This document shows, in pieces, positions 707 through 16,684 of a DNA stretch of 16,684 bases; position 1 is the first letter of the stretch; the number at the start of each line of letters is the position of its first letter. Location: contig JANKJI020000004.1 of NCBI GenBank assembly GCA_024626585.2, forward strand, positions 48,736,201-48,752,884. The letters run 5' to 3'. The stretch comes from Ginkgo biloba. Lineage: Eukaryota > Plantae > Ginkgophyta. A program made the translations under genes and the position numbers. Below the pieces are notes generated by a model. That model saw only the letters and a program-made list of their open reading frames with translations. It did no database searches and was not told the origin of the DNA.

Positions 707-1722
707 TAATCATAGTCGGATCTAACCATAAAAGATAAATTGTCGACTTCAACATAATAGAGGCAGGAAAGCTAACAAACCTAAGCAAAGCCACAAAATT
801 TTGTCCGAGAATCATCTATGGTACGCAATCGAGTTAAAGATTAAGATCATCAACATGGTAAAATGGGTGAAGCCCCTTGGCTAGGCCCTAGGGCTGGAGC
901 CAATTCAAGTGAAATCTCATATTCAGACATATTTTCCAAAATGATGCAATGTGCTAAGGCATCAAACTTGAGTAGTTAAGGAGCTCTAACAAATTATTTC
1001 ATATCGATAGTTGAGATTTACCAATGGAGATCAATGATCGAGATCTCATCAAAGATCAACATTAAGTGTCATAGTGTAGAAGGGCCCACTAATATAGTCT
1101 GGATAAAATGCAAATTGAAAAAAAGGCCCAATAGCAATGCAAAGGACCCACATAGCATGAGACTACCTTGGACTCTTCAATGCTTCAACAGAAGCTCCAC
1201 ATAAATGCACTACCACTTGGAAGGTAACCACGTCAACTAGCTACAATCCAAGGAGTTGGAATCAAACATTTTATAAATATATTTTCTCAAGACATGCACA
1301 TAGCCAATTGGAACAACACTTGGGGATCGAAACATCGCTAAGGATAAATTAGACTTAGAAACATGGTTCATTAGGTGAGTTCACTACTAGTAGTTAGAAG
1401 AGGATCAAATGACTCAAAATTAGACATTGAAAGTTTTGCTTATTTTCTTTTTCCTTCTTCAAGGTTCTTGTAAGTGTTGTAAGTTGACCCTCTTTAAGGG
1501 GCAAAGGTTCTACTCACCCAAATAAGCAAATCCCTTTTGTGGGATATAAAGTTGTGTAAATTTGTGGATATAGATTCCACTTTGAATCTTGATTTAAAAG
1601 ATTTGTAGATCATCCCATTTTTCGTTAATAAAATCAATCCCTTTCCTATGAACACAACTTATAAATGTGAATCTCAATCATTGCAATATGCTTTAGTTGT
1701 GCACATAGTAAAATTTGGATGA
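707..1722. mobile_element. ~1016-bp unclassified insertion interrupting gypsy pol (solo-LTR-like size)
   Basis: Flanked by GTGCC (702-706) and GTGTC (1723-1727). Removing it with one flank copy restores the in-frame minus-strand reading ...GDYWD-TTRVAQATMIFQDFFNVF. Termini are TA...GA, not TG...CA. Confidence 0.5.
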
Positions 1723-1818
1723 GTGTCCCAATAATCACCAAGTATAATTTTATTTGGGATTCGCTTGTGTGCCAATATTGATTTTTCTCATCTCTAATTC
1801 CTTAGACTGATTAACCAT
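1398..1818 (+). repeat. Direct repeat copy A (~420 bp) of 1919-2327
   Basis: Colinear with 1919-2327 from AAGAGGA(T/C)CAAATGACTC to TAACCAT; about 30 differences in the first ~220 nt (~85% identity, counted by eye). Confidence 0.95.
1723..1818 (-). mobile_element. Gypsy pol pre-RT linker motif (copy A)
   Basis: MVNQSKELEMRKINIGTQANPK/IILGDYWD, similar to the KVNIGTEENPK...IGDYWD motif that immediately precedes RT in gypsy elements of non-flowering plants. Confidence 0.7.
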
Positions 1819-4257: not shown

Positions 4258-4427
4258 TTTCACAATAGATAAAAGTACATAACCGTTGACTAATGAATGA
4301 AACAATGTGTTCTTGGATAAATTGATGATCGATGGATGGATGATCCTTGCCCTACATATTAAAATGATATAAATACTATTTCTGGAGCCTTTTCATGGCA
4401 AATCTACAAAGAGACATTTCATTCCAT

Positions 4428-4449
4428 TAAAACAATCATGATTGTTTTA
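4428..4449. repeat. Perfect 22-bp palindrome TAAAACAATCATGATTGTTTTA
   Basis: Base-by-base self-complementarity checked. Confidence 0.95.
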
Positions 4450-4607
4450 TTCCTAACTCTTGTGGTTACTATCAAATTAAGCTCCTGAGGCAACTAAGAC
4501 AACTCAGTGTAGGCCATCATCTCCATCAGTGTGCCTCATATTGCCAAGTTTTGTCGTTGATGTTAGTCGGTTCAAGTCGGATGGTGTCGACGACAATGGC
4601 TCTCAAC

Positions 4608-5122
4608 GATTCTCGATGTTGATCCAGTCAATTCATGCATATCAAAGAGGATATCCCAATATATCAAATGGAGCATTGCCTTAAAGACTGGGGCTTCCAT
4701 ATCTGTAACTTTTATGACTGTATGTTGATCCTTCATCGGACCAAAATATGGGCACTTAAGACAGTTGAGCGAGTAGCAAGCCCCAATTTGTGAGCCAAAA
4801 AATTCCCCATCCACTTCGAAGCTAACATCGGCACCCTTGATACTGTCCAGAAACTCCCCAAAATGTTGACCAAGGGTTGATTCTGGCACTAGAATAGTAT
4901 AAATCTTGGGTCCCTCAATACGTGACCTCACTCCACCGATAGTACATCGTATGGAGAGGTAATCATCTTAAGAAAATATGATGGTTGCAATTGTCCCTAC
5001 AATAACTTCTTCACACAAAATTGATTCCAAACATGAGCCTATCCAAACCATAGCGATATATTGCAGCAAGCAAATGTTGGGCCAAAAAAATTGAAGTGGT
5101 TTTGGAAGTCGATGTTAGAAGG
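4608..5122 (-). pseudogene. BPM: Circularly permuted, processed BTB/POZ-MATH (BPM) pseudogene fragment, copy 1
   Basis: Minus strand with frameshifts: STSKTTSIFLAQHLLAAIYRYGLDRLM/ESILCEEVIVGTIAT | SYFLK/DYLSIRCTIGGVRSRIEGPKIYTILVPESTLGQHFGEFLDSIKGADVSFEVDGEF/AHKLGLATRSTVLSAH/FGPMKDQHTVIKVTDMEAPVFKAMLHLIYWDILFDMHELTGSTS. Both halves match plant BPM proteins but are in swapped order; junction at ~4982/4981. The 5' end abuts a gap. Confidence 0.93.
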
Positions 5123-5867
5123 NNNNNNNNNNNNNNNNNNNNNNNNNNNNNNNNNNNNNNNNNNNNNNNNNNNNNNNNNNNNNNNNNNNNNNNNNNNNNN
5201 NNNNNNNNNNNNNNNNNNNNNNTTGGAATCAATTCCTTTGTCAGCCAAAAGTAAACACAACTGCTAAGTCCTTACAACTAGTGCTTTCATCTGTCTATAT
5301 CCAATCATATGCTATTGTTTTCTTCCAATAGGTTTTTTGCTACTTAAGCCTAATAATTAGCCATAGTTAGTGAACTAGTCTTTAAATTACAATTAGTAAA
5401 TAGCTACCAATTCACTACTTCACAATTGTTAGCCATCCTCCATGGAAGTATACGAAACTACAAACTACATGACCAACACTATATAAATTGACAAGCTATC
5501 AACAACTAAAACTAAAATGCACCTACAACAAACTCTTCCATGGAAAATAACAATATACAATGACTCCTAGATAAATTGATAAGACTCAATTATAGACTTA
5601 ATGAACTCATCAGCGCTAGACCTTAACTTACTACTAGATTGAACATAAGACATTAAAGTTTTAGCAGACTTGATAGACTCATTTTTATTGACTTGAACTT
5701 GTTACATTTTTTACAAAATATAATAGACTCACTCTTTAATAAATTCAAAACTAAGTTTAAAGAATTTTAAAATACATCATGATTAAATAAAGTAATCCTA
5801 GGGCTATCGGTGGATTATGTATCAAATGAGATTGATATGTCGGTGTCAGTTGAGATATCTGTGTCGA

Positions 5868-5910
5868 TGTCAATAAGCTCCATCAGTGTCAATAAGCTTC
5901 GTCGATGTCA
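5868..5910 (+). repeat. 19-bp tandem repeat (~2.3 copies) in a GTCGATGT-rich flank
   Basis: TGTCAATAAGCTCCATCAG (5868-5886), TGTCAATAAGCTTCGTCGA (5887-5905), TGTCA. Confidence 0.8.
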
Positions 5911-6531
5911 GCCATCATCTCCGTCAGTGTCGATTTGTAGGGTATTGTCAATGGGCCTCATATTATCAGGTTTTGTCATTGGTGTCGATGTTAGTGGCTT
6001 TCAATAGTTGTTGATGTTGATCCAGTCAATTCATGCAATATCAGGAAGGATATCCCGATATATGAAATGGAACATTGCCTTAAAGACTTGGGATTCCATG
6101 TCTATAACTTTTATGACTGTATGTTGATCCTTCATCAAACCAAAACATTGGGCCTTGAAGATAGGTGAACGAGTAGCAAGCCCAATTTGTGAGCCTAAAA
6201 AATTTCCACATCCACTTCGAAGCTAACATCGGCACCCTTGCCACTATCCAGAAACTCCCCAAAATTATGATCAAGGGTTGATCCTAGCACTGAAATAGTA
6301 TAAATCTTCAGTCCCTTAGTATGTTACCTCACTACTCCAATAGTACATTGTATGGAAAGGCAATCATATTCGAGAAAATCTGATGGTTGCAACTGCCTCC
6401 ATAATAACTTCTTTGCANNNNNNNNNNNNNNNNNNNNNNNNNNNNNNNNNNNNNNNNNNNNNNNNNNNNNNNNNNNNNNNNNNNGTTGGGCCAACAAAGT
6501 TGACGCAATTATTGAAGCCGGTGTGAGGAGG
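5911..6531 (+). repeat. Paralogous block of 4513-5122 (BPM cassette plus ~100 bp of shared flank)
   Basis: GCCATCATCTCC(A/G)TCAGTGT at 4513 and 5911; colinear through the BPM fragment at ~85% identity by eye. Confidence 0.93.
6006..6521 (-). pseudogene. BPM: Circularly permuted, processed BPM pseudogene fragment, copy 2
   Basis: Minus strand: PASIIASTLLAQ[67 N]CKEVIMEAVAT | SDFLEYDCLSIQCTIGVVR*HTKGLKIYTISVLGSTLDHNFGEFLDSGKGADVSFEVDVEIF*AHKL...KDQHTVIKVIDMESQVFKAMFHFIYRDILPD/HELTGSTSTT. Same junction (GCAACCA|TCAGATTTT) at ~6384/6383; in-frame stops and frameshifts. Confidence 0.93.
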
Positions 6532-7029
6532 TTCATTAGTGGTGGCTCCAACTCCATCGGCATCATTGGTTAAAACCCTATTGGCGCCGATCTTCTTACA
6601 TCCTCCATTGGTGGCATTGGTGATTGTTGTCGGTGAAATGGTTGTCGATGAACTCCTAGCTCTACCTCCATCCTTTCTCTTTTATTGTTGAGATTTGGAC
6701 GATGGTTCAACCATCAACATAGGATGCTCTTTTGGATTGATTAGCAAGNNNNNNNNNNNNNNNNNNNNNNNNNNNNNNNNNNNNNNNNNNNNNNNNNNNN
6801 NNNNNNNNNNNNNNNNNNNNNNNNNNNNNNNNNNNNNNNNNNNNNNNNGTGACTAATGTTGTGCTATGGCCAAGTGTTGTCAATGGAGTTGCAACCAAAG
6901 TCCATTGATATTGTTGTGAGTGGGGATGGTTATTAAAGCTACGACAAAGTCTATCCATGTAGCTACAACTGAAGACTATCATTATAGTTACAACTAGTTG
7001 TTGTCTTCAGGGCTGCGACCTAATATTTC

Positions 7030-7730
7030 TTTGTGGCAAACTCACCATCTTACAGTTTATTGTTTCTTTGTAGACTTTAGAAAGGCCTTTGATATAGTTT
7101 AGAGAAACTTGATTTTGGAGAGACTTCACAAAATTAGAAACTGCAAAGATCATAATTACGATGATTATTGTCTTACATAAGCAAGTGTTTGGTTGAGACT
7201 ACACTATACACGAACTCTCTGAAGATATTCCAAGCACTACTCCCTCACCTGCATTATTTGATTTATTCATTGATGAGCTTGATCAACACATCTACGAGGG
7301 GATACACAAATGGATGATGGTTGCCTACCACATGATGTTCTGATTGCCATCCTTCTTTTTCTTAACAACATTGTCCTCCTCTCTTCTACTCTAAACAATG
7401 TCTAAAGTCATAAAGATGCTCTAGCCTCATTTTATGACAATAGGTGCCTGGATGAAACTTACTAAGACTAAGGATATGATCTTTAACACTCCTACAAGTG
7501 TTGCATAATGACTCCAATCACTTTCAAGGGTCACATAATGGAGGCCATCTGTTCATATAGTTATCCGACCCAACTTTTATCATGCACCCAACAACCCATT
7601 CATGACTTTAGAAAGGGTTTGCTTCTCGAGAAAAAATTCTTTTAACTCCAACTCTAATATATTCACAACAAACGACACTTGGTCAATGCTCTAGTGAGAC
7701 TGTCAATACTACACGAATCAAATATGGCTT
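7030..7730 (+). mobile_element. Decayed non-LTR retrotransposon (LINE) RT, non-L1 type (RTE/RTEX-like)
   Basis: VYCFFVDFRKAFDIV*RNLILERLHKI (7055-), SEDIPSTTPSPALFDLFIDELD, GCLPHDVLIAILLFLNNIVLLSS (7352-7381 = degenerate LLFADD.VLL), DALASFYDNR..TKTKDMIFN, FKGHIMEAICSYSY, LVNALVRLSILHES. Confidence 0.88.
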
Positions 7731-8900: not shown

Positions 8901-9376
8901 CAATGGGGACCTAAAAAAATTGAATGGTTACGTTTAGTTATATTTACTCTATTAACAACAATCTCAAACAATTATGTTCCTAGCCTTAATTCATGAACAT
9001 ACACAATCTCTAAAACCTTCAAACACAATACAAGAATTTAGCAAACAAATATCAACCATCATAGAGAATAACATCTTGCTTNNNNNNNNNNNNNNNNNNN
9101 NNNNNNNNNNNNNNNNNNNNNNNNNNNNNNNNNNNNNNNNNNNNNNNNNNNNNNNNNNNNNNNNNNNNNNNNNNNNNNNNNATGTGTCAGGAGTTACGGG
9201 ACACGGTGAATCCACAACGGACCGTCACAAAACCCCTTGTGTATATATTTGTACCAAGCCTTGTACATTTTGGATGAGCATAATGGAAGGTTTATGGTTG
9301 ACCAATTCTACCTGAAATTGTTCTGTGTCTTGTGCTTGTTCGTTGATATTAGATTAATTCTAGTATTAGTTCTTAC

Positions 9377-13239: not shown

Positions 13240-13830
13240 TGAAATTGTTCTGTATTTTATGCTTGTTCATTTTTTGAATTACATTTGGTATCAAAGTTGA
13301 GGGTTCTCCTTAGTCTAATTTCAAAATTTAGTTGTGTCATTTTTATGGTGAATTTGGTGGCAAATCCATCTTTGTTCACTATTTCACTATTGTAGCTATT
13401 TGAAGAATGGAAATATATAAATCTTTGAAGAACCAACGTTGCAAGAATTCAAGAGTTGGAGGAGCCATAAGATTTGGTGACATAATTTTGGGCAGTAGAA
13501 GTTTGGTTAGACAGACATAATCTTGTAGAATTCAATATCTTTATGAGAATTCACTGATGAATGTGTGAGAAGCTATGTAAGAAGAAACCCGTTTGAATGC
13601 TATGCACCATCGTCTGTAAGTGAAGAATATAAGTGATTGTGGTAAGGTTGTTGGAGATTTATCATGAATAGACAAAATGTAATAAGGAGGTGAGAGGAGG
13701 TCTATTTTTTGCCATGGAAAATACTATAAAGGTGAAAGGGAGGCTCTCCAAGATCATGTAGGAACCATTCACTGGAGTTGAGGCCAGATTGTGGTGAAGG
13801 TATAGTCCCATGGAAAATCATCTCACTATT
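13240..13830 (+). mobile_element. LTR retrotransposon 5' part: LTR 3' end, PBS, leader and possible gag start
   Basis: LTR-type end ...TTACA (to 13283) followed 2 nt later by the PBS. Downstream is purine-rich decayed sequence with a weak gag-like FTGVEARLW*. The right boundary is uncertain. Confidence 0.55.
13286..13297 (+). promoter_or_regulatory. Primer-binding site complementary to tRNA-iMet 3' end
   Basis: TGGTATCAAAGT versus consensus TGGTATCAGAGC (2 transitions), placed 2 nt after a CA terminus. Confidence 0.7.
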
Positions 13831-13868: not shown

Positions 13869-14459
13869 TTTCTTTCTTAAAAACTTTTCATTAATATGCG
13901 CACATTTACATATAATACAAGGGCTTTGAAGTCAAAATTAAAAGATAAAGATAAACTTTAAGTGCAAATAATTAGGACCAGAAATATTAATGGTATGCCA
14001 AAGCTACATTCAAAAAAATAGGCAATAACTCTCCTTCAACCAGTCGCTTTGGGACTATCATGAACCTCCTCCACAAAAGCAAAGTTAGATCATAATTGTG
14101 ACAAAAAATGAGTGTAACAAAAATCCATAAAAAGGATAATTTGACCCAAATTTAAACTATCAACTATATTATAGCTCNNNNNNNNNNACTTTTCCTATTT
14201 ATGCTTCATTGGGGCCTTTGTAAGGCCTCTTAAACCTGTGAAAAACCAACAAAAATATATAAAGATTTTACTCATTCCTAATTGTCAACAAGGGCAATTT
14301 CCTCCTCTTCAAGATGGTTAGTAGACAAATCCTAATTGACATCTATTCCCATTGAGGTTTAAGTACTATGATCTCCTAGATCAAATTATAGAAACCTCAT
14401 TAATATAGATTGATCAAAAATTGGACAAGGAAAGACCATCTGATCACATTTACCTTCCT
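13869..14459 (-). other. Putative L1 3' UTR with decayed A-rich tail
   Basis: T-rich sequence on the minus strand after the end of ORF2 homology, ending ...TATTAATGAAAAGTTTTTAAGAAAGAAA; no TSD can be verified. Confidence 0.3.
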
Positions 14460-16684
14460 CACTTACAAAGCACTATTTGGCTATTGAATTTTCCCAGGAA
14501 TTCCACATCCTACTCAAGTAAGAGATTTTTCAAGCCTCAAAATGAGAAGATATATTTGATCTCCTTCACTATGATTTATAGGATAGGATTATTATAGATC
14601 CACCTATTATGAACCATCTTAATAATTAGTTGATAATCTTTAAATATATCAATTTTCCAAACATTCTTCTCCATTACAAGTTTTAATCCTTCTCTAAGTT
14701 CCTTACCTTCCACTATGTTATTGGAAGAGATACCCAAGACTTCACAAAGAGCAAATCTACATAGCTAATCCAAAATCACCAAAAGGCCTCCTTCCCTAAC
14801 CTATCCTAGGTTCTTCCTTGATGCCCCATAAAAAAAAAAGACTCTTCCTCTCTCTTACTCAAATCTTGAGATGCCTCTACTTTCCTTTATCATTTTTTTA
14901 TACTTCCCTTAAATATTATAGTTTGGGATAAGACAAACCTCAAGTTGTAAGTTCCACCAAATATTCCTTCTCCAAAGGATGCTTCTCCTTTAATTTCATA
15001 GAAGAAATGCATCCCACTATAAATTTCTTTACTGCATTCATCACCCTAGCAACCGAAGGGTGAAAATTATTGAAGATGCAGTTGTTCCTTTCCAACCATA
15101 AAAACCATAAGATAAACTTTGGGAGATCCCTTTTTAATTGAACTAGACAACCTCTTTTTGACTTATACATCCATTTGAATCTTAATAGTTAGTTTTAGTC
15201 ATCAAGTAGATCTGAGACATGGCCATAGAGGAGTTCTTCTTCTTGAGGATATAAAATTAATCCTAAGGCCTCATTCCACACCTCTTTGTTAAAATTGCAC
15301 TAATATAAACATATTCTTAACCTACTCCTCTTGGTACTCATAGAGAAAACATATAGAAGGGCCATGAAACCCCCTCCAAATGAAGTTATCTATTGTAAGA
15401 ATGGCATTATAAAAGGACAACTACACCAAAACATTAACCTTTGTAAGACTAGGAGAGACCCACATAGTTATCCATTTTTTCTACTATTCCTCCCCAGTTA
15501 TGATCCAAAATCTCATAACCCCCTCTAAGAAAATAAGAGTTTTAGCCTTGAACTCCTATCCATGCCAACCTATCCTCCTCTTAAGAGAGAAAAATATTCC
15601 TCTTACCCAAATAAATTATCATCTTTTGGTAATATCTACTAAGTGCATTTGTAATCTCTATCCACTCTTCCAATCCTTTCCAACAAAACATAGAGAGGTC
15701 ACCTTTAGGGATACCAACAATAAGTTTTTTTATAAATTTTTTTATCCTCCAATAGCCTCTAATGNNNNNNNNNNNNNNNNNNNNNNNNNNNNNNNNNNNN
15801 NNNNNNNNNNNNNNNNNNNNNNNNNNNNNNNNNNNNNNNNNNATAAATATTTTTTCCATCTCCTAGGATCCATTATAGATGGTCCTAAATCAATGGTAAT
15901 CCTTGAATAATGTTCCTTCACAAGAGCAATCCTAAGTAGTGAGGGGTATCATACCATAATAAAGAGATCCTCAAAATCCCACCATAATATTTATTAATCA
16001 ATATGTCCTTATAGAGATAAGGAGAACCTAAACTTAGTCTCTAAGCTTACTTCATTCCAAGGGCCTCTACCAAATCCACCATCTTATGGACCCCCAAAAC
16101 TCCTAACTTCTTGGCTCTATAGATCATAGCCTAATTTAACAAATAGATTATCTTCTTATCTTTCCATCCCTTCCAATGAAAGGACCTCATATTTATCTCA
16201 AACCCGTTTATAATTCCCTTAGGGATAGCCAGAAAAGAACATATAAAGATAGGAAAGGGGGTCGTCACTGAGTTCATTAAAGTTACCTTTCCTACTAACG
16301 TAATCCACACTATAGTAAAACCTTCTATTTTTTCTAGAATGTCTGTAAGAGGGGAGTCCAATATTTTCCTCTAAAAGGGTTGGGAGAGAGTGGTGCACCA
16401 AGGTATCTTGTTGGAGAGTCAAAGGTGCCTCTGTAAAATCGTAGAAGTTTGTAAATTTTGTTGTACAATCTCACTGAGCTATTCATCACAAAAACCAATA
16501 TTTTATCCTTATTCACAGAACCTCCAGATGCCATCAAAAAGGTATTTAGATCTTCCTTGAATCCCTTCATATTTACCAATAATATTATGCCCAAACGAAT
16601 TATGTCATCCATAAATTATACATGAGACACTCATTTGTAGTTTGAGGTTATCTCCACTCAAATAAATGAACCCAACTCATCTTT
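14460..16684 (-). mobile_element. Decayed plant L1 LINE ORF2 3' half (RT C-terminus, zf-RVT, RNase H); continues beyond the window end
   Basis: RT region: VSHV*FMDD (16615-16604; SHLQFADD motif), ASGGSVNKDK, PTRYLGAPL, TLVGKVTLMNSV, AKKLGVLGV. zf-RVT ~15275-15470: KVNVLV*LSFYNAILTIDNFIWRGFHGPSICFLY...CNFNKEVW; then PKFILWFLWLERNNCIF. RNase H ~14480-14833: YGASRKNLG...LGISSNNIVEGKELREGL...KDYQLII. Confidence 0.95.

What the first reader, a model, noticed from the sequence alone, without database searches (positions are those of the whole stretch)
4608..6521. Circularly permuted, intronless BPM fragment: candidate circRNA-derived pseudogene in a plant
Seen: both copies read BTB C-half (..AQHLLAA..RYGLDRL..ES.LCEEV...T[I/V]AT), then a back-junction (4982/4981; 6384/6383), then MATH end and BTB N-half (SDFL..D.LSI.CTIGVV..GADVSFEVDGE..AHKL..VFKAMLH.IYWD..ELTGSTS), stopping where they began. 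That is one full turn of a ~505-nt circle. The junction lies in called bases in two separate contigs, so it is not a gap artefact. Established: native BPM order is MATH, BTB, BACK. From recollection of Arabidopsis BPM gene structure, an intron follows ..AP[I/V]FK; here TTTAAG|GCAATG is contiguous, implying an RNA-derived template. Inference: a circular RNA (or circularised cDNA) from internal BPM exons was reverse-transcribed and integrated. Such circRNA-derived pseudogenes are described in mammals; I am not aware of plant cases but cannot search.
Basis: partly seen in the sequence, partly recalled or inferred. Interest (0 to 1): 0.85.

Follow-up and report, generated by a model that had tools for sequence, protein, structure and literature searches.

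The report
Permuted BPM mRNA fossil in Ginkgo
This is a dead, intron-free copy of part of a Ginkgo protein-degradation gene with its two halves swapped; it came from mRNA, but its joint lies inside exons, so it is not a classical circular-RNA pseudogene and more likely arose when a reverse transcriptase jumped between templates.

Summary
Two tandem copies (85% alike, minus strand) of a 499-nt piece of Ginkgo biloba BPM gene Gb_03319 read residues 270-312, then 146-272: one turn plus a 10-17-nt overlap. Independent contigs span the joints and close the gaps. The intron at VFK|AM (Riccia, Amborella, Cryptomeria; inferred for the Ginkgo parent) is missing, so the template was spliced RNA. The circRNA reading fails its defining test. 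The back-junction lies about 38 nt inside exon 2 and about 86 nt before the end of exon 3, without GT/AG, at weak microsimilarity. All 31 parent polyA reads leaving these sites continue linearly. A second, apparently spliced fragment (ARP4) sits 150 nt upstream. Best reading (0.45): reverse-transcriptase template switching that jumped to the uncopied downstream part of the same mRNA and stopped at its own RNase H cut. Rivals: a cDNA circle integrated at microhomology, an interior circRNA, or tandem duplications. Both copies are decayed and share derived changes: one capture, then duplication. The scan noted two other permuted retrocopies (DnaJ13, dynein) on other DNA of this genome, unchecked. 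Verdict: new variant of a chimeric retrocopy, moderate interest.

The parts
6658..6748 (-). ARP4 (Gb_30963) fragment, residues 121-149, decayed; apparently crosses the intron site in codon 145; bounded upstream by a repeat across a zero-length gap
   Evidence: tblastn 81% over 21 aa, E 6e-10; mRNA reads with ARP4 loose ends; intron position from Amborella; 11 of 12 letters match past the intron site with one 3-nt gap
6523..6657 (-). Linker of unknown origin between the ARP4 and BPM pieces, low copy, no RNA reads
   Evidence: depth 80-130 against a single-copy depth of about 80
6506..6522 (-). Entry overlap of copy 2: repeats the last 10-17 nt of the exit (8/10, 11/17 matches to the parent)
6386..6505 (-). 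Copy 2 piece B: BPM residues about 270-312 (BTB C-half, start of BACK); includes the 67-N gap
6006..6385 (-). Copy 2 piece A: BPM residues 146-272 (MATH end, BTB N-half); back-junction 6386|6385; lost intron at 6079|6078; stops and frameshifts
5770..6005 (-). Downstream flank of copy 2, motif-rich, homologous to the flank of copy 1; no poly(A)
5223..5808 (.). High-copy, indel-variable repeat between the two copies; contiguous with 5122
   Evidence: summed contig depth 500-27,000 against about 80 for single-copy contigs; many skipping joints
5097..5122 (-). Entry flank of copy 1: 17/26 identical to the entry flank of copy 2, 11/17 to the parent's exit letters
4984..5096 (-). Copy 1 piece B: BPM residues about 270-312, frameshifted
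4607..4983 (-). Copy 1 piece A: BPM residues 146-272; back-junction 4984|4983; lost intron at 4680|4679; 4575-4967 is the last exon of gene model Gb_27384
4425..4606 (-). Downstream flank of copy 1, homologous to about 6005-5770

Best explanation
A dead chimeric retro-fragment made by reverse-transcriptase template switching, most likely in an LTR-retrotransposon particle, then duplicated in tandem. Inferred steps: RT copying element RNA hopped onto the spliced Gb_03319 mRNA near codon 272 at a short shared motif and copied back to codon 146 across the exon 2/3 junction. It slipped at weak microsimilarity onto the still-uncopied downstream part of the same mRNA (codon 312). It copied back until it met the end that its own RNase H had cut at the entry point, and was forced back onto element RNA and then an ARP4 mRNA. 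This gives exactly one permuted turn plus a 10-17-nt overlap without any circle. Shown: the order, intron loss, mid-exon joint, overlap, ARP4 neighbour, single origin and decay. Inferred: the enzyme, the particle and the same-molecule jump. The product has no apparent function.
For: Intron lost. Joint mid-exon, no GT/AG; the parent reads TTGCAAC on the donor side and TAGAAAC on the acceptor side, 5/7 alike, reached by about 4% of random pairs allowing a 1-nt offset. Entry/exit overlap significant and within the 18-bp spacing of the RT and RNase H sites (HIV RT, PMC3185654). A second, apparently spliced gene piece lies 150 nt upstream. Partial, multi-parent copies with microsimilarity at the joints are the signature of LTR-mediated retroposition (PMC5131818). 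Forced switching at RNA breaks and intramolecular switches that give duplications are established for retroviral RT (PMC3187697). No poly(A). An independent intronless BPM capture in Cryptomeria carries a mid-exon 102-nt back-jump and a deletion. 9 of 32 listed parent differences are shared by both copies, 6-7 of them derived by outgroup. 23 of 32 changes are C>T or G>A.
Against: No LTR pair or RT domain was identified around the locus, and no clear primer site; the flanks next to the insert are single-copy at 80% likeness, so no empty element was seen. The microsimilarity at the back-junction is weak (at least 3 exact letters in about 16% of random pairs). A same-molecule jump that gives one turn is my inference; I found no paper describing it. 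A circle of RNA or cDNA gives the identical sequence.
Confidence: 0.45

Rival explanations
1. A cDNA fragment of the spliced mRNA was closed into a DNA circle by microhomology-mediated end joining and integrated by one crossover at a 10-17-nt microhomology (eccDNA-type duplication, here starting from a retro-cDNA).
For: One turn with a short direct overlap is what a single crossover gives; permuted duplicates through DNA circles are described in the human genome (PMC7188851); the mid-exon joint fits end joining.
Against: It does not by itself explain the adjoining ARP4 mRNA piece, and it needs reverse transcription first anyway. No empty site was seen among the listed joints, although 43 joints were not shown.
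Confidence: 0.2
2. A non-canonical ('interior') circular RNA of Gb_03319, closed inside exons 2 and 3 at a short homologous sequence, was copied once around and captured.
For: Interior circRNAs with back-fusion points in 2-56-nt homologies and no splice signal are reported (PMC8153647). One turn is natural for a circle read by an RT with RNase H. The RNA test here was weak (polyA library, 6% read; the other RNA run had no reads on BPM).
Against: 0 of the 31 parent reads that leave the two junction sites took the back-junction. Such circles are rare beside the linear mRNA, and from my own knowledge many are suspected RT artefacts. Nothing in the sequence needs a circle.
Confidence: 0.15
3. A linear retrocopy A-B was split by an insertion with a 10-17-nt target duplication, then amplified head to tail (A-Z-B, A-Z-B, A-Z-B); the outer A and B were lost or lie outside the window.
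For: The copies are true tandem neighbours with shared flanks on both sides; depth arithmetic hints at one more A-like piece somewhere in the genome.
Against: No further BPM piece in the 16.7-kb window. The middle spacer lacks the ARP4 piece and most of the linker found before copy 2. It needs two duplications and further losses.
Confidence: 0.15
4. Classical circRNA-derived pseudogene from a back-spliced exon 2-3 circle.
For: Intron lost, reversed order, no poly(A), repeats in the flanks, as for the mouse circRFWD2 pseudogenes (PMC4897178).
Against: The joint is not exon-exon: about 38 nt of exon 2 and about 86 nt of exon 3 are missing at it, in both copies at the same letter, with no GT or AG. 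It would need a later deletion that removed the true splice joint.
Confidence: 0.04
5. Assembly artefact.
For: The window is made of short contigs with many N gaps.
Against: Contigs from two other studies span the copy-1 joint, one spans the copy-2 joint, and gaps close; a published gene model holds the copy-1 frame at 100% identity.
Confidence: 0.01

Closest known systems
LTR-mediated retrocopies by microsimilarity-driven template switching (Tan et al. 2016, PMC5131818; maize Bs1; 'abnormal template switching' in the plant review PMC13317346)
   Same: Partial, intronless mRNA pieces; more than one parent gene; short similarity at the joints; no poly(A); later re-duplication.
   Different: Here the piece is permuted by exactly one turn with entry and exit at one site; the word searches of those papers found no such case. 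Flanking LTRs were not identified here.
circRNA-derived pseudogenes (Dong et al. 2016, PMC4897178)
   Same: Reversed order, intron loss, no poly(A), repeat-rich flanks.
   Different: Their joint is a back-spliced exon-exon junction matching a known circRNA; this one is mid-exon without splice signals, and no matching RNA was seen.
eccDNA-mediated permuted duplications (Takahashi and Innan 2020, PMC7188851)
   Same: Order efghij-abcd with the cut point shared by both ends.
   Different: Those are described as duplicated genomic DNA fragments; this one is a 0.5-kb spliced cDNA.
Interior circRNAs with short homologous sequences (described in PMC8153647)
   Same: Mid-exon back-fusion at a short homology, no splice signal.
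   Different: Those are RNAs; no genomic fossil of one was found in my searches, and no such RNA was detected here.
Plant BPM (MATH-BTB-BACK) CUL3 adaptors, parent Gb_03319
   Same: Source of the sequence (Pfam MATH_2, BTB, BACK_BPM_SPOP).
   Different: The copies are permuted, partial, frameshifted and not seen in the polyA sample.

Membership tests
circRNA-derived pseudogene (Dong 2016) | Non-colinear order of parent sequence in genomic DNA | tested here: met
circRNA-derived pseudogene (Dong 2016) | The reversed joint is an exon-exon (back-splice) junction | tested here: not met
   about 38 nt inside exon 2 and about 86 nt before the end of exon 3, no GT/AG; exon borders from Cryptomeria, Amborella and Riccia
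circRNA-derived pseudogene (Dong 2016) | A parent circRNA with the same joint exists | tested here: inconclusive
   0 of 31 polyA reads; no coverage in the second RNA run
circRNA-derived pseudogene (Dong 2016) | Introns removed, no poly(A) tail | tested here: met
LTR-mediated chimeric retrocopy (Tan 2016) | Partial, intronless mRNA copy | tested here: met
LTR-mediated chimeric retrocopy (Tan 2016) | Microsimilarity at switch points | tested here: inconclusive
   entry/exit overlap significant; back-junction 5/7, about 4% by chance; the element-side template is unknown
LTR-mediated chimeric retrocopy (Tan 2016) | Pieces of two or more parent mRNAs side by side | tested here: met
   ARP4 121-149 lies 150 nt from BPM; its intron loss rests on 12 letters
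LTR-mediated chimeric retrocopy (Tan 2016) | Flanked by discontinuous parts of an LTR retrotransposon with both LTRs | tested here: inconclusive
   high-copy repeats on both sides, but no LTR pair, clear primer site or RT domain identified
eccDNA-mediated permuted duplication | Entry and exit at one shared cut point | tested here: met
eccDNA-mediated permuted duplication | Empty recipient site with contiguous flanks in a relative | not testable with these tools
   flanks are single-copy at 80% likeness; no cycad or full Ginkgo genome was searchable
Functional BPM gene | Open MATH-BTB-BACK frame, expressed | tested here: not met
   stops and frameshifts; no RNA read above 95% identity

The most novel reading that the evidence does not exclude
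Ginkgo holds a recurrent class of 'one-turn' permuted mRNA fossils (BPM here, possibly the neighbouring ARP4, and the DnaJ13 and dynein cases noted by first readers). They are made by a definable process, either same-molecule RT jumping or capture of interior circular RNAs, and they mimic circRNA pseudogenes without back-splicing. Counting their joints genome-wide would test which process it is, and whether interior circles exist in living plant cells.
Probability: 0.3. Interest if true: 0.7.

Novelty: new variant of a known kind. Interest (0 to 1): 0.48.

Why it matters
The locus itself is dead DNA. Its value is mechanistic. It shows that a reversed, intronless gene piece can carry a joint that no spliceosome made, so reversed order alone should not be filed as a circRNA pseudogene. 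Entry and exit at one site with a 10-17-nt overlap is a countable signature. If it recurs across the Ginkgo genome it records in vivo how reverse transcriptases shuffle domain order, and it bears on the question of whether mid-exon 'interior' circles are real RNAs or RT products. It also shows that gene model Gb_27384 is probably a false gene stitched from pseudogene pieces.

Tried and rejected
High-copy element: guessed (small runs held the stretch), rejected (the listed sizes are contig letters; both copies have single-copy depth of about 75-85). Scaffolder placing paralogues side by side: rejected, the 5123-5222 gap has zero length. Canonical back-splice: rejected on junction position. Gb_18050 as parent: lower scores than Gb_03319. 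DNA for Gb_27384, Gb_03319 and the short copy-1 ORF was not on record, so the Ginkgo intron letters and the other ARP4 pieces were not seen. The junction pattern in metagenome contigs gave 0 hits. PDB search blank. No LTR pair, poly(A) or RT domain near the locus; one 8-letter primer-site-like word at 6582 may be chance. Cryptomeria BPM fragments are linear and show no similarity to the window outside the BPM part, so they are a separate event. Paper searches found no plant circRNA-derived pseudogene and no one-turn permuted retrocopy; the library lacks most subscription papers, and the original interior-circRNA paper was not held.

Full report
Source and setting. The window is a string of short contigs with N gaps. 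The open stretch 4575-4967 is 100% identical to residues 217-337 of a protein filed as Ginkgo biloba Gb_27384. Its best full-length relative is Ginkgo Gb_03319, a MATH-BTB-BACK protein (73%). I take the genome to be Ginkgo on this basis; the reads tools give only coded names.

Observation. Two copies, 84.6% identical over 435 nt, lie on the minus strand. Each reads BPM residues about 270-312 (piece B) and then 146-272 (piece A). Laying contigs and reads on 4940-7300 answered the gap question. One X7 contig runs from 5533 to 5223 and straight on into 5122-4940 with no difference, so the 100-N gap has zero length and the copies are true tandem neighbours about 1.3 kb apart. The gap 6749-6848 is also zero, and an X5 contig bridges the 67-N gap. 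The copy-1 joint is spanned in two studies other than the possible source sample, the copy-2 joint in one listed contig. X5 and X7 are not on record as DNA; I infer it from the even depth and the parent contig that stops at the intron site. Both copies have single-copy depth (75-85 in X7), which corrected my first guess of a high-copy family.

Parent and RNA template. The polyA run gave 111 reads, none above 95% identity, so they come from related genes and the copies look silent in that sample. Applying the listed read variants to copy 2 gives frames matching Gb_03319 at 65/69 and 58/65 residues, against 48 each for the paralogue Gb_18050. Of the 32 listed differences 23 are C>T or G>A, as expected for decay of methylated DNA. 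BPM genes of Amborella, Riccia and Cryptomeria have introns at the same three places, one of them at PVFK|A. A Ginkgo contig carrying the parent's letters stops matching at 6078, exactly this site, while mRNA reads and both copies run through. The intron letters themselves were not shown. The insert therefore comes from spliced RNA.

The joint. The loose ends of parent reads give both contexts. The donor side ends TTGCAAC and continues TACT in the parent; the acceptor side begins CATCAG after TAGAAA. Neither side has GT or AG. The acceptor lies about 38 nt inside exon 2, and the donor about 86 nt before the end of exon 3. A back-spliced exon 2-3 circle would be about 620 nt; the observed turn is 499 nt. 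The two sites share 5 of 7 letters with a 1-nt offset; about 4% of random pairs in a conifer BPM coding sequence do as well, and about 16% share three exact letters. This is weak microsimilarity. All 12 reads leaving at the donor and all 19 leaving at the acceptor continue linearly. That test is weak, because polyA selection removes circles, only 6% of the run was read, and the second RNA run had no reads on BPM. Dong et al. define the class by a reversed exon-exon junction and note that other RT routes can give non-colinear joints (PMC4897178). The defining feature is not met.

One turn. Nineteen mRNA reads join the exit of copy 2 (6006) to the entry of copy 1 (5096) with one letter between, so nothing is missing at the cut. 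The letters before each entry repeat the last letters of the exit: 8/10 and 11/17 for copy 2, 6/10 and 11/17 for copy 1. Flank windows reach these scores in 0.04-1.4% of cases.

One capture, then duplication. Both copies have the same joint, entry flanks 17/26 alike, and downstream flanks homologous for about 200 nt. Nine of 32 listed parent differences are shared, and conifer outgroups side with the parent at six or seven of them. A high-copy repeat (5223-5808) separates the copies.

A second gene. mRNA reads also lie on 6686-6748, and their loose ends read as ARP4. The piece covers residues 121-149 of Gb_30963. It runs about 12 letters past the intron site that Amborella has in codon 145, which suggests but does not prove a spliced template. 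Gene model Gb_27384 lists ARP4 150-339, then ARP4 1-30, then BPM piece A. The window's piece ends one codon before the model's entry at residue 150, so ARP4 may be a second one-turn permutation. This rests on a gene model; the DNA of those pieces is not in the window and was not on record.

Mechanism. Partial copies, several parents, short similarities and no poly(A) are the marks of LTR-mediated retroposition by template switching (PMC5131818). Retroviral RT switches at breaks in the RNA, and intramolecular switches give deletions and duplications (PMC3187697). RNase H cuts 18 bp behind the polymerase site (PMC3185654). My inference: after entering the mRNA at codon 272, RT destroys what it copies and leaves the downstream part intact. 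If it slips onto that remnant, it must stop where it first entered. The result is one permuted turn with an overlap shorter than about 18 nt, with no circle. Sequence alone cannot tell this from a cDNA circle integrated at microhomology (compare PMC7188851) or from an interior circRNA (PMC8153647). I favour it (0.45 against 0.2 and 0.15) because of the adjoining ARP4 piece, the linear reads, and a separate intronless BPM capture in Cryptomeria with a mid-exon 102-nt back-jump and a deletion. Against it, I found no LTR pair or RT remnant at the locus. A split linear retrocopy amplified head to tail (0.15) is not excluded, since the assembly is incomplete.

Novelty. My searches found no plant circRNA-derived pseudogene and no description of one-turn permuted retrocopies; word searches of a 2026 review of gene capture in plants and of a 2026 gymnosperm pseudogene study found no mention of permutation. 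The library is incomplete. First readers flagged two more permuted retrocopies and several chimeric fragments elsewhere in this genome; I did not check them and do not count them as support. Verdict: a real, dead, RNA-derived, permuted fragment; not a member of the back-splice class; a new variant of chimeric retrocopy whose interest depends on whether the pattern recurs.

Noticed in passing
window 6658-6748 and protein P0001 (Gb_27384) residues 26-202: ARP4 pieces in non-colinear order (150-339, then 1-30; window piece 121-149): possibly a second one-turn permuted cDNA at the same locus. The model's ends lie near ARP4 exon borders, so this one could be a better back-splice candidate than BPM. 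Gb_27384 is probably a false gene model.
   Followed up: partly
window about 6012-6184: Contig depth sums in run X7 (an extra 78.8 besides parent and both copies) hint at a third BPM-like piece elsewhere in the genome; its arrangement is unknown, and this is arithmetic, not a seen sequence.
   Followed up: no
window 1398-1818 and 1919-2327: A second tandem pair, 80% identical, across a 100-N gap; no coding match sought.
   Followed up: no
L007-L010 6591-7295 and L011 5172-5607 (Cryptomeria japonica): An independent, linear, intronless BPM fragment with an internal deletion, and in L007 a 102-nt tandem back-jump; L007-L010 lie at an even 18,013-bp spacing on one chromosome; L011 lies just outside a Copia-like element.
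   Followed up: partly
window 13280-13297: LTR-end-like CA followed by a tRNA-Met primer-site-like word; 13240-13271 resembles 9313-9344. Ordinary LTR-element remnant.
   Followed up: no
window about 14200-16684, minus strand: By eye a decayed LINE-like reverse-transcriptase region; the short frames tested gave no Pfam hit.
   Followed up: partly
window 5123-5222 and 6749-6848: Both 100-N gaps have zero length in independent contigs, so other 100-N gaps in this assembly may also be empty.
   Followed up: yes
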